Shown here piece after piece: positions 60,514 to 64,000 of a stretch of DNA of 64,000 nucleotides; position 1 is the first letter of the stretch, and every line of letters begins with the position of its first letter. A program made the position numbers and the translations under genes. The stretch comes from Adineta vaga. Taxonomy: Eukaryota > Animalia > Rotifera. Location of the stretch: the NCBI GenBank assembly GCA_021613535.1, contig CP075493.1, forward strand, positions 13,268,001-13,332,000, read 5' to 3'. A model generated the notes under the pieces. The model was not told the origin of the DNA. It saw only the letters and a list, made by a program, of their open reading frames with translations, and did not search any database.

Positions 60514-61373
60514 GTGTCTTTTTCTTTTATTTCGTAATCAAGAAAACAAAAATTCAACTTAATTGATCCCATAGACGGATTCATTCTCAAAATCATAATC
60601 CAACGGTTCATATTTATTTATAAATAAACATGTCGGAAGTTCTGCTGTATGTTCTTGTAATCGATCGAGTACATAATTAGGTCTACTTGTTTCAGATTAT
60701 ATCTAACTCCGATCTTTTCAATGCACAGCAAAATTCTTGAATATTTGACATGTATTCGGGAGTGAAGCATGCATCATGTTAAGAAGCTGTAATTTTGAGA
60801 CTCTATCGTTTTAAAGTTTTGATAATAGTTGACTCTTTAAATTCACAATGTTTCTAAGATAAATTCTGGATTAGGTGTATATAAATCTATGCGTAAATCA
60901 AATGATTTCACATTTGGAATATAATACTCGAATATAGGAAGAGATATACTGAATTGCTATTACATGTCGACGATAAGGTGTTTCGTAAGATGGATTGATT
61001 AAAACAAAACTATAATATTAAACGTATGAAGCTGTAAATAAAATTGCGGAGTTTCAATAAATGATTCATATAGAACTATACGTCATCTTGAATCTTTCAG
61101 TACAAATTTGTTTTGATTGTGAGTTATAATCAAGAATCGCAAGCGATCAAATAATTTATATCTTTATGGGATTTTTAGTTTCATCTAAGTATTCTTCGTG
61201 CACTTAAAATGTGCCTTTGATAACATATCGATGTTTCGAATCATGTTTTCACCGATGCTTATACCTTATATCTTTTTTTTTCTCTCACATCTGATCAAAG
61301 TCACATACATTCATTACTGATTCTATCATCCTCTTCATTTATTCATTTTCTTCTTTCATACACTCTTTTCAAT

Positions 61374-61643
61374 ATGCGTTTCATCGTTACAATTATTTCC
61401 ATCATCATGCTTGTTGTTGCATTATCAACAGCATTTCCTCAACATCAACGTATGCGTCGTGGTCCAATTGATCTCAGTGGTTTGACTGCTCCTGGTGGAA
61501 TGTCACTTATATGCATATTTCCACCATGTCCAGTACAACCCATTGTTTTTCCAACAAACATTGATTGGGATGCTCTTCATGCTAGCATTGCTCAATGGAA
61601 TAAAGAACAGGAACAACTAGCATTATTACAAGCAAATAATTGA
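61374..61643 (+). CDS. Small secreted protein / peptide precursor
   Basis: Signal peptide, RMRR furin-like site, CIFPPC. Confidence 0.65.
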   Translation: MRFIVTIISIIMLVVALSTAFPQHQRMRRGPIDLSGLTAPGGMSLICIFPPCPVQPIVFPTNIDWDALHASIAQWNKEQEQLALLQANN

Positions 61644-61859
61644 AAAGAAAACAAAAAAATAAATCTTTTTTTTTCAAACAATAAGTCTTCTATGAATGCT
61701 TTACTGTAATAACATTCTACTTTTATTATTATTATTATTAATAAACAATACTGCGAGAAGACATACTACAATGTGACAAATATAGTTCCATATCTTACGT
61801 AGTAGATGTATTATAATGAGGATATAACTGTAAATATAAGTTAATCTTGTTGTTTGTTG

Positions 61860-63467
61860 TCAAGCACTAAAAGTAGTTACAACAAGAAGTAATTGTAAAT
61901 ACCAGTCGACACATTGTACACAAAACGATGTGCTCAATGCATGCAAATAGTCTTGTTCTAATTCAATTAAAAGCCAATACCACCAACGAAGTGGTGTCAT
62001 TATGATATGCATCAACCAATGAGGATATGTTGCGTAACATGAAGCAATAATATTGTTCGTTACAATTCTTCCCTCAAATGTCAATGGAGCATAAGCATAA
62101 TCATCAACATTCGTACTTTCTCGTATTTCAATCACCTTAACCATTTGATGAAGTAAAGTGGAATAAACAAAGTCTCCTGCTGAAACGTCACGAGCAAAAC
62201 GATACTGTTCGCTTTCGTCATGAGATCTACGCACAAGTATGGAATGTGTTGGTGTTAGACGAAGTGGATGGCTTCGATTTTCATTACAATGTATTTCCAT
62301 AAATGATATCGATGAACGATAATGACGAAAAATTGCTAATACAGCACTTGATTTGTGAGAATCGATACGAACTTGTTCTCCTACTCGTAGATTGTGCAAA
62401 GGAACTTGAATCCCACTTTCAAGTGTGACCATCGTTTTTGAAGAGAAACATGGTGTAGTTGTAGTTCTAGCTGTTGTTGTAGTAGTAGTAGTAGTAGTTG
62501 TTGTTGTAGTTGTTGTGCTAAAGACGGATTTGATCATATTAAACACTAGACCAAATAGCGTTATTAGCAAAATTGATAGTAACACAATACACAAAAGACG
62601 TCTTATGAAGATCTTCGATCTTTCAGATTGTTCACGCTGTTGTATGTTTTGTGGATAAATGCCGACGGTTGTATTGGCATATTCTGTTTGAGGATGATTA
62701 TCAGATATACAATCGTTTCGAATTAAAGGTGTGTATTCCTCTTTTTGTCGGATATTCGGTAATCGACGAATATTCTGAAAAAAGAATGATTTCATATAAC
62801 ACATTGGTGGAAAACGCCCAAAGTCATCTTTTCAGGATTATGGAATTTTGAAAAGAATAGTGATGATGGAGATTACTACTGTTTATCTTTAGTCCCTTAT
62901 GTGTCAGTTCTTGCTTTCATGCAAAGATATTTTTCGGTGCGATAAAAACATTCTTATACAAAACACAATACTTACAGTTGTGAAAATCATGTCATCCTCA
63001 CTATCATCATCGCTGAATGGACGATTCAATGATGTTTTTAATCCATTGTTTTCAATTTAACGACAAGGTCGTCCCAAATCACGACACTTCTGACACAAAC
63101 TTTCATTATGTGTTCCATTTGGATTCATAGCATTCAATACATTCTTATATTGTGATTTGTGCCTGTCAATACATTTTTGATCTTCCCAGTCACCAGGATC
63201 TCGTGGGTGAATTAACACCGATGAATTGCAGTTTTCGCACGATAACCCTAAATCGGAATGACATGAATGCCACATCATGTGACAATCGTCACAAATATAG
63301 ACGAAATTCTTGGAAAGATTCGTTGGATAAACTAATGTATTACATTGTTTACAATTTTGACCATGATTGTCCCATGCTTTGGTACTCTTCCATCGTCGTC
63401 CACAATGAGAACATTGGAAATTTCCATACTGTGGACGAGTTTTAAGAAGTGTATCATTCGTAAGCAT
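61860..63467 (-). CDS. zf-3CxxC - TM - Thr stalk - Hedgehog Hint/SRR (Hog) protein with an in-frame TAA at 63057-63059
   Basis: YGNFQCSHC..W.S..AW..CKQC..HNESLCQKC. The frame stays open after TAA to a phase-0 intron (62775-62975). TM, poly-Thr, P|CFS, LTPTH, YAPLT.EG.IV.N...ASCYA, then SRR-like helices. Confidence 0.75.
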
Positions 63468-64000
63468 TGCTTGTTGTTTTTCTTTCAAACGCGTGGTTGT
63501 ACTTACCGTTCACGATGTGAGCACAAGTTAGACTGCGTGACAAACGAAGAACATTTTCGTAAGCTGTACGGTTCGATAAAGAAAAAAGAAAAGCAAAATA
63601 TTGGAGAAAACATGGTAGAATGGGAAAAGAAAGAAAAAAAAGTGTTAACAGAACGTGAGACAAAATATAGAAAGAAAGATTGTCAGAATAGATGACACAT
63701 GTACTATTATACACGAAGTATTTTTCATCTGTAAAATCATCAGATGAATAAATATCAAAAATTTGATTCCACCTCAAACTATGTATTTGGATAATAATAC
63801 GAATAAAACTCTTTTTCTTTTTTCCTATTTGTGAGTTACAGATAGATTAATCTTTCCATCCGTACTTTTCTCTACCATTCAACCACAAAAAAGGAATGAA
63901 AAGAAAAAACAGAACGTCGACACATTTTTATACAGATTTATATTTTACTAGATTCATATGAATCTATTGATATTCTAGCATCGAGTAAACAGTATTAAGA

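What the first reader, a model, noticed from the sequence alone, without database searches (positions are those of the whole stretch)
61860..63467. RTP/ZAR1-like 3CxxC zinc finger fused through a TM to an autoprocessing Hedgehog Hog module
Seen: the 3CxxC ORF (63057-63467) continues in frame past one TAA (IENNGLK...MIFTT) to a GTAAGT donor at 62975. This splices in phase 0 to the CAG acceptor at 62775 of the TM-poly-Thr-Hint exon. The Hint domain keeps the catalytic Cys (62448-62450), TxxH, YAPLT/ASCYA and SRR-like HWLMH..PLRW and DWYLQLL. Known: 3CxxC + C-terminal TM is the receptor-transporting protein (RTP4, antiviral RNA-binding) layout, and Hog domains self-cleave and attach sterol. Inference: a type II membrane protein with a cytosolic zinc/RNA-binding domain whose luminal stalk is self-cleaved and possibly lipidated. 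I do not know this architecture from hedgehog-related families. The residue matching the sterol-activating Asp appears replaced (AIFRH vs Hh TFLDR), so the nucleophile may differ.
Basis: partly seen in the sequence, partly recalled or inferred. Interest (0 to 1): 0.85.

Follow-up and report, generated by a model that had tools for sequence, protein, structure and literature searches.

The report
Rotifer zinc-finger–membrane–Hog fusion gene
Bdelloid rotifers carry a conserved gene joining a ZAR1/RTP-like zinc domain, through a membrane anchor and a threonine stalk, to a hedgehog-type self-cleaving module; I found no paper describing this, and the copy in this window carries a stop codon seen only in the reference assembly.

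Summary

- **Domains:** Pfam places Zn_ribbon_3CxxC_2 on the first exon (2e-10) and Hint on the second (1.3e-26).
- **Splice:** RNA-like contigs from two samples join 62976 to 62774 exactly, removing a 201-base GT..AG intron.
- **Conservation:** the same collinear layout occurs in a 2.7 kb inverted duplicate 48 kb away, in Adineta ricciae, in Rotaria magnacalcarata and on two unnamed contigs. The linked Hint domains form one well-supported clade.
- **The stop codon:** It replaces a conserved Glu codon. Every public contig laid over it, RNA-like or DNA, reads GAA. All expressed contigs are of the duplicate's sequence type.

As assembled, the window copy therefore encodes only the annotated 136-residue zinc protein. 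The fusion is real for the gene family.

Self-cleavage is inferred, not shown. The catalytic Cys, TxxH and SCY motifs are kept. Two features depart from hedgehog: the residue before the Cys is a conserved Pro rather than Gly, and the general-base Asp is replaced by an invariant F-x-H-x-R.

Verdict: a new variant of the known Hog-protein kind.

The parts
63468..63527 (-). 5' untranslated region (minimum extent); no ATG upstream of 63467 within it
   Evidence: The RNA-like contig X17 record 18 covers 63370-63527 and X15 record 7 covers 63268-63488. Sequence read.
63060..63467 (-). Exon 1, part 1: the 136-codon 3CxxC zinc domain, with five CxxC pairs plus one Cys and one His. All 12 family-invariant ligands are present.
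   Evidence: PF17180 2e-10, 41 bits. Invariant C19 C22 C39 C42 C59 C62 C77 C80 H120 C125 C128 C135 in alignment A1. AlphaFold2 mean pLDDT 84.7. ZAR1 RNA-binding domain 9JKO Z 7.6, rmsd 3.7, 85 of 98 residues aligned.
63057..63059 (-). In-frame TAA that splits the gene in the reference assembly. It sits at a conserved Glu codon (family consensus PCRE).
   Evidence: The duplicate has GAA. At 63059 the contigs of X15, X16 and DNA run X2 all read C on the plus strand, which is GAA. Consensus from A1.
62976..63056 (-). Exon 1, part 2: a 27-codon acidic linker in frame with the zinc domain. It holds an ATG at 62990-62988.
   Evidence: The linker is open in the duplicate and in A. ricciae.
62775..62975 (-). 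201-base phase-0 GT..AG intron
   Evidence: Joint 62774|62976 in X15 record 3 (228 letters on the shorter side) and X16 record 12. No RNA-like depth falls inside the intron. The DNA run covers it without a joint.
62598..62774 (-). Exon 2, cytosolic spacer (59 codons), ending in the basic flank SKIFIRR
   Evidence: Translation. dN/dS about 0.8-0.9, so weakly constrained.
62532..62597 (-). Predicted signal-anchor transmembrane helix (about 22 hydrophobic residues). Basic residues lie on the N-terminal side, which implies N-in, C-out.
   Evidence: Read from the sequence. Equivalent helices preceded by basic residues occur in Rotaria L020, L023 and L035. The topology is inferred from the positive-inside rule.
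62454..62516 (-). Thr stalk: 15 Thr, then Ala-Arg, then 4 Thr
   Evidence: The stalk is present and variable in length in all relatives.
62448..62453 (-). Predicted scissile Pro-Cys pair: Pro 62453-62451 and catalytic Cys 62450-62448
   Evidence: the Cys aligns to Cys1 of 1AT0. Pro at -1 occurs in every row of the 3CxxC-linked clade whose sequence reaches the cleavage site (window, P0001, P0004, P0038), against mostly Gly in other bdelloid Hints, and again in L035.
62031..62450 (-). Hint module. It includes F-R-H-Y-R (62330-62316) where hedgehog has D-R-N, TPTH (62255-62244) and SCY.
   Evidence: PF01079 1.3e-26. phmmer to 6TD6, 6TYY and 1AT0. AlphaFold2 mean pLDDT 90.1. Foldseek best matches are 1AT0 and 6TYY, TM-score by target 0.83 and 0.82. 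Invariant columns.
61863..62030 (-). SRR/ARR-like C-terminal tail, predicted as two long helices
   Evidence: The PF01079 match runs to profile position 208 of 213. The alignment to full-length hedgehog 6TD6 extends to its residue 427. Helices at model residues 153-172 and 176-204.
61093..63808 (.). Extent of the 2.7 kb inverted segmental duplication shared with G000:C1:13379215-13381933 (95.35% identity)
   Evidence: blastn of the window against the 90 kb to its right.

Best explanation
This locus is one of two inverted, 95%-identical copies of a bdelloid-specific two-exon gene in Adineta vaga.

**The intact product** has five parts: an N-terminal cytosolic ZAR1/RTP-like 3CxxC zinc domain with three predicted Zn sites, an acidic linker, a signal-anchor transmembrane helix, a Thr-rich stalk that is presumably O-glycosylated, and a luminal hedgehog-type Hog module (Hint plus a helical SRR-like tail).

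**Most likely mechanism (inferred).** The helix inserts the protein N-in, C-out in the ER. The Hint Cys then attacks the Pro-Cys bond in an N-to-S acyl shift assisted by TxxH. The thioester is resolved by a nucleophile that need not be cholesterol, because the Asp general base is replaced by Phe, with an invariant His two residues further on. This releases the Hog module. What remains is a membrane-anchored zinc domain facing the cytosol, with a short glycosylated stalk whose end may carry an adduct.

**The window copy.** As it stands in the reference it carries a G-to-T nonsense change (GAA to TAA) directly after the zinc domain. This haplotype therefore encodes only the annotated 136-residue protein, and its mRNA should be a target of nonsense-mediated decay. 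The expressed, apparently intact transcripts come from duplicate-type sequence. The TAA is a minority allele or an assembly error.
For: **Shown**
- Domains.
- The exact splice in RNA-like contigs, which bridge both domains and read GAA.
- The duplicate's open linker.
- The same collinear order in other lineages: A. ricciae; the Rotaria magnacalcarata model CAM4836164.1, which has both Pfam domains and whose genomic DNA encodes a TM just upstream of the model's acceptor; the metagenome scaffold L035, with a 52-base phase-0 GT..AG intron giving one open frame; and the Logan contig L023.
- The 3CxxC-linked Hints fall in one clade of 9 rows with support 100/99.
- dN/dS is 0.23 for the Hint domain and 0.26 for the zinc domain between the two A. 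vaga copies.
- Fold matches to hedgehog 1AT0 and ZAR1.
- X17 record 17 (62522-62653) has exactly the duplicate's 6 substitutions and no gap. The reference duplicate's 2-base deletion is therefore absent from the expressed sequence.

**From the literature**
- The D303H swap keeps hedgehog autoprocessing active (PMC9163320).
- D303A blocks only the transesterification step (PMC4695875).
Against: - No transcript of window-type sequence was seen, so there is no direct evidence that this copy is expressed.
- All three assembled Adineta copies carry a lesion: TAA here, a 2-base deletion in the duplicate, and a CAA-to-TAA change at codon 18 in both A. ricciae assemblies.
- dN/dS of the zinc domain between species is 0.5-0.6.
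- Pro at -1 is, from my recollection of intein work, very unfavourable for the acyl shift.
- No acidic general base is present.
- The runs are only guessed to be RNA, and they are contigs, which drop minority variants.
- Topology, glycosylation, cleavage and adduct are all inferred.
Confidence: 0.7

Rival explanations
1. The window locus is a genuinely split or decaying copy. The TAA is real and fixed at this locus. The locus then yields only a soluble 136-residue 3CxxC protein. The Hog exon is either untranslated or made at a low level from the ATG at 62990 (MIFTT, then exon 2).
For: - The TAA is in the chromosome-level reference, and the public annotation calls a 136-residue protein here (P0034).
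- An in-frame ATG lies 22 codons downstream.
- Redundancy after the duplication permits loss.
- Lesions occur in all three assembled Adineta copies.
- No window-type RNA contig was seen.
Against: - Every public contig laid over 63059 reads GAA, including the DNA contig X2 record 22, which is 98.2% identical to the window.
- All 12 zinc ligands and all Hint motifs are intact here.
- dN/dS between the copies is about 0.25 in both domains.
Confidence: 0.3
2. The fusion protein is made, but its Hog module does not cleave. With Pro at -1 and no Asp general base it would serve as a permanent luminal or extracellular binding or sensing domain, for example for sterols, on a type II membrane protein.
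For: - Pro at -1 is conserved in the whole 3CxxC-linked subfamily, while sister bdelloid Hints mostly keep Gly.
- The Asp is replaced by an invariant Phe.
- The SRR-like helices are conserved.
Against: - The nucleophilic Cys, TxxH and SCY are invariant under purifying selection, which is hard to explain without catalysis.
- The same F-x-H-x-R motif is shared with the Gly-Cys-Phe paralogues.
- His can replace the Asp in Drosophila hedgehog (PMC9163320).
Confidence: 0.25
3. There are two independent neighbouring genes, a 3CxxC gene and a TM-Thr-Hog gene. The joined contigs would then be read-through or assembly artefacts.
For: - Public annotations of A. vaga call only the zinc-domain ORFs (P0034; P0184 is unspliced).
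- Stand-alone TM-Thr-Hog genes are common in this genome.
- Tail-anchored 3CxxC proteins without a Hint domain exist (P0042, P0060, P0079).
Against: - The splice joins the two reading frames in phase 0 at canonical GT..AG sites.
- The linker has no stop in the duplicate, A. ricciae, Rotaria or L035.
- The order and strand are conserved across two bdelloid families.
- Exon 2 has no start of its own ahead of the acceptor in most copies.
Confidence: 0.05

Closest known systems
Hedgehog and hedgehog-related Hog proteins: Hh, nematode Warthog, Groundhog and Quahog, Xiphinema Thog, choanoflagellate Hoglet (Burglin 2008, PMC2362128)
   Same: A C-terminal Hint module of the hedgehog type followed by an SRR/ARR-like tail. 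It keeps the N-terminal Cys, TxxH and SCY. The upstream cargo is variable. A poly-Thr stretch directly before the Hog domain occurs in Thog and Hoglet too.
   Different: - There is no Hedge, Wart or Ground domain and no signal peptide.
- The cargo is a type II membrane protein with a cytosolic zinc domain.
- Pro replaces Gly at -1.
- Phe replaces the Asp general base, with an invariant His two residues on.
- No HH_signal match was found anywhere in this genome in six frames. That search's controls did not ring either, so the negative is weak.
Receptor-transporting proteins RTP1-4, and ZAR1/ZAR1L (3CxxC zinc-domain proteins)
   Same: A 3CxxC-type zinc domain (PF17180 here; PF13695 reached by relatives). 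The fold is nearest to the ZAR1 RNA-binding domain (Z 7.6). As in RTPs, the domain sits N-terminal to a single TM helix with a cytosolic orientation. Relatives P0042, P0060 and P0079 end right after the TM, as RTPs do.
   Different: - The family has five CxxC pairs and its own invariant pattern.
- PF13695 is below its cut-off in the window protein (15.2 against 23 bits).
- The TM is not C-terminal: about 220 luminal residues follow it.
- Nothing supports orthology to the vertebrate RTPs, and RNA binding is untested.
Bdelloid membrane-anchor / Thr-stalk / Hog family (for example A. vaga I4U23_017614, P0026; scan note s1-484552)
   Same: The same TM, poly-Thr and Hog layout, with the same F-x-H-x-R, PLRLTPxHS, LTFEG and SCY motifs.
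   Different: Those proteins have only a short cytosolic N-terminus and Gly-Cys-Phe at the cleavage site. The 3CxxC-linked genes form a separate clade with a long stem branch (0.69) and Pro-Cys-Phe.

Membership tests
Hedgehog-type Hog domain (Hint PF01079 plus SRR/ARR) | Sequence match to the Hint module above the curated cut-off | tested here: met
   94 bits against a cut-off of 29.7, profile positions 8-208 of 213.
Hedgehog-type Hog domain (Hint PF01079 plus SRR/ARR) | Hint fold, nearest to hedgehog rather than to inteins | tested here: met
   AlphaFold2 mean pLDDT 90.1. The top Foldseek hits are 1AT0 and 6TYY (TM-score by target 0.83 and 0.82, 26% identity), ahead of BIL domains and inteins.
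Hedgehog-type Hog domain (Hint PF01079 plus SRR/ARR) | Nucleophilic Cys as the first residue of the module, plus the TxxH motif | tested here: met
   The Cys at 62450-62448 aligns to Cys1 of 1AT0, and TPTH aligns to TPAH. T75 and H78 are invariant in A2.
Hedgehog-type Hog domain (Hint PF01079 plus SRR/ARR) | Gly at position -1 (Gly-Cys-Phe cleavage site) | tested here: not met
   The site is Pro-Cys-Phe here, in P0001, P0004, P0038 and L035. Most other bdelloid Hints have Gly-Cys-Phe.
Hedgehog-type Hog domain (Hint PF01079 plus SRR/ARR) | Asp general base (D303 in Drosophila Hh, D46 in Hint numbering) for sterol transfer | tested here: not met
   A gap-free phmmer alignment puts Phe at this position, and no acidic residue is nearby. 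F50, H52 and R54 are invariant in 35 bellloid-type sequences.
Hedgehog-type Hog domain (Hint PF01079 plus SRR/ARR) | C-terminal sterol/adduct recognition region | tested here: inconclusive
   About 56 residues follow SCY. They align to the first part of the hedgehog SRR (6TD6, up to residue 427) and are predicted as two helices. Ligand binding cannot be tested here.
Hedgehog-type Hog domain (Hint PF01079 plus SRR/ARR) | Autoproteolysis with covalent adduct transfer | not testable with these tools
   This needs biochemistry.
Hedgehog proper | N-terminal Hedge signalling domain (PF01085) | tested here: not met
   Exon 1 matches 3CxxC families only. There is no PF01085 match in the genome, but the control genomes gave none either.
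3CxxC zinc-binding domains (PF17180 / PF13695; RTP and ZAR1 group) | Profile match above the curated cut-off | tested here: met
   PF17180 scores 41 bits against 27. PF13695 is below its cut-off in the window protein (15.2 against 23). It is above the cut-off, over nearly the full profile, in relatives P0038, P0041, P0042, P0058 and P0060.
3CxxC zinc-binding domains (PF17180 / PF13695; RTP and ZAR1 group) | Conserved CxxC zinc ligands | tested here: met
   Eleven Cys and one His are invariant across 13 sequences, and all are present in the window copy.
3CxxC zinc-binding domains (PF17180 / PF13695; RTP and ZAR1 group) | Fold like a solved 3CxxC domain | tested here: met
   ZAR1 RNA-binding domain 9JKO_A: Z 7.6, rmsd 3.7, 85 of 98 residues. 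It stands clear of the next hit, Shiftless at Z 4.4. The Foldseek E-value is only 0.03.
RTP family (receptor-transporting proteins) | 3CxxC domain followed by a C-terminal tail-anchor TM | tested here: not met
   A TM is present, but 223 residues follow it. The shorter relatives P0042, P0060 and P0079 do end at the TM. Orthology to the vertebrate RTPs was not tested.
RTP family (receptor-transporting proteins) | RNA binding or receptor chaperoning | not testable with these tools
   This needs experiments.

The most novel reading that the evidence does not exclude
The intact protein would be an ER-membrane RNA-binding factor in the manner of RTP4 or ZAR1, whose maturation depends on a natural variant of hedgehog chemistry. 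That variant has a Pro-Cys scissile bond and a Phe/His active site in place of Gly-Cys and Asp. It would attach a non-cholesterol adduct to the luminal end of a transmembrane cargo, giving a doubly anchored product. This would be the first Hog protein whose cargo spans the membrane and acts in the cytosol.
Probability: 0.15. Interest if true: 0.8.

Novelty: new variant of a known kind. Interest (0 to 1): 0.55.

Why it matters
Hog modules are known to process secreted cargo: hedgehog ligands, nematode cuticle proteins and Thr-rich Hoglet. Here the cargo is a membrane protein whose functional domain, a ZAR1/RTP-like zinc domain, faces the cytosol. Luminal self-cleavage would therefore control or mark a cytosolic factor from the other side of the membrane.

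The subfamily also offers natural experiments on Hint chemistry. One is a conserved Pro at -1. The other is a Phe/His replacement of the Asp general base, which recalls the engineered D303H swap.

In practice, the public annotations of A. vaga miss the fusion. One copy is called as a 136-residue protein. The other is called unspliced. No protein model covering the Hint exon turned up in the 167-532-residue range searched.

The finding also shows 3CxxC-plus-TM proteins outside vertebrates. Papers describe the RTP family as present in jawed vertebrates (PMC8172065).

Tried and rejected
- **An intron that removes the TAA.** I considered a donor AA|GTGTCG near 63085 and an acceptor TTCAG|C near 63013, both phase 2. 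It is rejected: X15 record 3 and X16 record 12 run unbroken over 62976-63203.
- **Stop-codon readthrough.** This is unlikely. The codon is TAA followed by A, and other copies simply have GAA.
- **The duplicate as an uncollapsed haplotig or large palindrome.** Rejected. Homology covers only 2.7 kb inside 90 kb of otherwise unrelated flank.
- **A homoeologous copy on another chromosome.** Only a decayed fragment exists, on C5.
- **Word-based searches for further fused proteins.** Searches with P0001 residues 1-100 and 1-200 returned only P0001 itself and the window's own 136-residue protein.
- **Literature searches.** None found this fusion: Hog domain + rotifer, Adineta + Hint domain, 3CxxC + Hint, and bdelloid + hedgehog + Hint.
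- **Support for the effect of Pro at -1.** That paper search gave nothing usable, so the point rests on my recollection.
- **A PDB sequence search with the zinc domain.** It found nothing significant. Only the fold comparison did.
Full report
**1. What is in the sequence**

On the minus strand an ATG at 63467 opens a 136-codon frame that ends at TAA 63059-63057. The same frame continues for 27 codons to a GTAAGT donor at 62975. An acceptor cag at 62777-62775 then opens a 304-codon exon, 62774-61863, with its stop at 61862-61860.

Pfam places Zn_ribbon_3CxxC_2 (PF17180, 2e-10, 41 bits against a cut-off of 27) on the first piece. It places Hint (PF01079, 1.3e-26, 94 bits against 29.7, profile positions 8-208 of 213) on the last piece. 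The 27-residue linker matches nothing.

Exon 2 reads as follows:
- a 59-residue spacer;
- a hydrophobic helix of about 22 residues preceded by SKIFIRR;
- fifteen Thr, then Ala-Arg, then four Thr;
- Pro-Cys-Phe, followed by the Hint module and a 56-residue tail.

**2. Organism and copies**

The genome has 6 contigs and 100.8 Mb. The nearest named proteins are from Adineta vaga. An earlier scan note names the same species.

A six-frame search of the genome finds just one other full copy, inverted, at C1:13379555-13381158. The duplicated block is only 2.7 kb, window 61093-63808, at 95.35% identity. It lies in otherwise unrelated sequence, so it is a small inverted segmental duplication and not an uncollapsed haplotype.

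In the duplicate the codon at the TAA position is GAA, and the frame is open from the ATG to the same GTAAGT donor. The reference sequence of the duplicate, however, lacks 2 bases opposite window 62612-62611, which shifts the frame before the TM helix. A fragment on contig 5 has lost a zinc-ligand Cys and is decayed.

**3. Transcripts**

Only contigs of public runs could be laid, in the one call allowed. Two RNA-like runs from one study but different samples (X15, X16) hold contigs that join 62774 to 62976. The join skips exactly 201 bases, with GT..AG ends on the minus strand.
- X15 record 3 (518 letters) spans 62522-62774 plus 62976-63203. It therefore runs from the TM region across the splice and the stop position into the zinc domain.
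- These runs have no depth in the intron or upstream of about 63530.
- The DNA run X2 covers everything and shows no joint.

I compared the other letters in these contigs with the differences between the window and the duplicate. The expressed contigs carry the duplicate's variants almost everywhere, including C at 63059 on the plus strand, which is GAA.

None of the contigs shows the duplicate's 2-base deletion, although the same table does report the duplicate's other indels, at 61796-61820. X17 record 17 (62522-62653) has exactly six other letters and no gap. That matches the duplicate's six substitutions without the deletion.

The expressed sequence is therefore duplicate-type, open at the stop position and without the frameshift. 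No window-type transcript contig was seen. That fits nonsense-mediated decay of a TAA allele, because the stop lies 81 bases upstream of the exon junction. This last point is inference.

The only X2 DNA contig over 63059 (record 22) is 98.2% identical to the window and a mosaic of both types. It also reads GAA. Because such contigs keep majority variants, the TAA is at most a minority state among the four haplotype copies, or it is an assembly error.

**4. Conservation of the layout**

- **A. ricciae.** The NCBI model P0001 (410 residues, 85% identical) runs from inside the zinc domain through an open linker, the same splice, the TM helix, the Thr stalk and Pro-Cys-Phe to the Hint domain. The genomic DNA holds the whole zinc exon in frame, but with CAA changed to TAA at codon 18. 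That explains why the model starts at an internal Met. Both assemblies share this stop.
- **Profile-free search.** A search with the zinc exon over 1.84 billion representatives gave 167 hits.
- **Rotaria magnacalcarata.** P0038 (543 residues, CAM4836164.1) carries PF17180, PF13695 and PF01079 in one model. Its locus encodes a basic-flanked TM helix in frame just upstream of the acceptor the model chose. The true product therefore probably has the same five parts.
- **Metagenome scaffold L035.** It has the zinc exon followed, after a 52-base phase-0 GT..AG intron, by a spacer, a TM helix, about 45 Thr, a short amphipathic segment, Pro-Pro-Cys-Phe and the Hint domain.
- **Logan contig L023.** It has the zinc exon and, downstream on the same strand, a TM plus poly-Thr exon that runs off the contig end.
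- **Tree.** In a maximum-likelihood tree of 35 bdelloid-type Hint domains, the four rows with proven linkage fall in one clade of nine with support 100/99 and a stem length of 0.69. The other five rows are fragments whose upstream sequence is unknown. This points to one origin of the fusion before the split of Adinetidae and Philodinidae.
- **Unfused relatives.** Other relatives of the zinc domain (P0042, P0060, P0079) end directly after a TM helix, as tail-anchored proteins do. Stand-alone TM-Thr-Hog genes are numerous in this genome, with 27 Hint matches.

**5. Selection**

The figures below are Nei-Gojobori estimates made per exon, with gapped and stop codons dropped and nothing repaired.

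| Region | Window vs duplicate | Window vs A. ricciae |
|---|---|---|
| Hint domain | 0.24 | 0.23 |
| Zinc domain | 0.26 | 0.59 |
| Cytosolic spacer | not computable (no synonymous changes) | about 0.9 |

Counts are small. The Hint domain is clearly constrained. The zinc domain is constrained within A. vaga and more relaxed toward A. ricciae, whose copy is interrupted.

All three assembled Adineta copies carry a different lesion. Two of those lesions are not seen in public read-derived contigs. I read this as redundancy-tolerated or spurious lesions in a gene that still has at least one intact expressed copy. Decay of the window copy cannot be excluded.

**6. The zinc domain**

Thirteen family members share invariant C19, C22, C39, C42, C59, C62, C77, C80, H120, C125, C128 and C135. 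That is enough for three tetrahedral zinc sites, and all are intact in the window. The consensus after the last Cys is Arg-Glu, so the TAA replaces a conserved Glu.

The AlphaFold2 model (mean pLDDT 84.7) has weak Foldseek matches. The top two are human Shiftless and the ZAR1 RNA-binding domain. On re-alignment ZAR1 stands out: 9JKO, Z 7.6, rmsd 3.7 Å, 85 of 98 residues. Shiftless follows at Z 4.4, and the next hits are at 3.0 or below. 'ZAR1/RTP-like 3CxxC' is therefore supported as a domain class. Orthology to the RTPs is not supported.

**7. The Hog module**

The model has mean pLDDT 90.1. Its best structural matches are the Drosophila hedgehog C-terminal fragment 1AT0 and its D46H mutant 6TYY (TM-score by target 0.83 and 0.82), ahead of BIL domains and inteins.

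phmmer aligns several features to hedgehog:
- the Cys aligns to Cys1;
- TPTH aligns to TPAH;
- ASCYA aligns to ASCYA;
- the start of the tail aligns to the start of the hedgehog SRR.

Two features differ.
- **The general base.** D303 (D46 in Hint numbering) coordinates both catalytic steps. D303A blocks sterol transfer but not thioester formation (PMC9163320; PMC4695875). In a gap-free stretch anchored on both sides, that Asp aligns to Phe. All 35 bdelloid-type sequences have F-x-H-x-R at this place. On a beta-strand, residues i and i+2 face the same way. The invariant His could therefore take the base role, much as the engineered D303H does. This is inference.
- **The residue before the Cys.** It is Pro in every 3CxxC-linked gene whose sequence reaches the cleavage site (window, duplicate, P0001, P0004, P0038, L035). 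It is mostly Gly in the other bdelloid Hints. From memory of intein studies, Pro at -1 strongly slows the acyl shift. Its conservation argues that it is functional, perhaps as a brake or switch, rather than a defect.

**8. Comparison with what is known**

Burglin's survey of Hog proteins lists many N-terminal cargos, including poly-Thr stretches in Xiphinema Thog and choanoflagellate Hoglet. It lists no zinc finger, and the only transmembrane region it mentions is in a cadherin-repeat protein of the cnidarian section, not in the cargo of a Hog protein (PMC2362128).

Full-text searches found no paper on Hog or Hint proteins of rotifers, nor on a 3CxxC-Hint combination. Within this scan the duplicate had been noted but not followed up. 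The plain TM-Thr-Hog family had been described.

I therefore class the gene as a new variant of a known kind. The Hog part is a member of the hedgehog-type Hint family by sequence and fold, although it fails two hedgehog-specific catalytic-site features. The zinc part is a 3CxxC domain. The combination across a membrane appears to be undescribed.

**9. Verdict**

It is right about the family architecture and about the missing Asp. It overlooks that the window copy is interrupted and that the expressed sequence is of the duplicate's type. Cleavage and lipidation are unproven.
All searches used the exons separately.

Noticed in passing
window 61374-61643 (+): An 89-residue ORF with a signal-peptide-like start (MRFIVTIISIIMLVVALS...) lies convergent to the gene and was copied with it in the 2.7 kb duplication. 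RNA-like contigs over it have very high depth (333-554), against about 5-15 for the fusion gene.
   Followed up: no
G000:C1:13379215-13381933 (L017 positions 1056-2668): The duplicate copy is publicly annotated as an unspliced 187-residue protein (I4U23_004394, P0184) that reads into the intron. Its reference sequence has a 2-base deletion in exon 2 that no public contig laid here shows.
   Followed up: partly
G000:C5:2355124-2355528 (L015, L016): A decayed fragment of the same zinc domain on another chromosome. The first CxxC reads CSHG, it is split into two pieces, and no Hint domain lies nearby. It is probably the remnant of the homoeologous copy.
   Followed up: partly
L020 3262-3420 (Rotaria magnacalcarata CBCPNK020002492.1): The NCBI model CAM4836164.1 seems to use an acceptor inside the TM-coding stretch. 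A CATAG|GTAATA donor and a ttcag acceptor about 68 bases apart would keep the frame and include the basic-flanked TM helix.
   Followed up: partly
P0042, P0060, P0079 (unnamed ENA and Logan contigs): These proteins have the same 3CxxC domain, a long disordered linker and a C-terminal TM helix, with nothing after it. That is an RTP-like tail-anchored layout, in sequences that are probably from invertebrates. Their organisms were not identified.
   Followed up: no
P0012 and P0025 (Rotaria sp. Silwood1): Other bdelloid Hint domains sit in models behind a NOX-type FAD/NAD-binding region (PF08022, PF08030) or behind a seven-helix membrane region. These may be real fusions or merged gene models.
   Followed up: no
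whole genome G000: The six-frame search found no HH_signal (PF01085) match in the genome, while at least 27 Hint-type matches exist. The control genomes gave no signal either, so the negative is weak.
   Followed up: partly
L018 and L019 3851-3873 (A. ricciae): Both A. ricciae assemblies share a CAA-to-TAA stop at codon 18 of the zinc exon, while the rest of the gene, including all the Cys ligands, is intact.
   Followed up: partly
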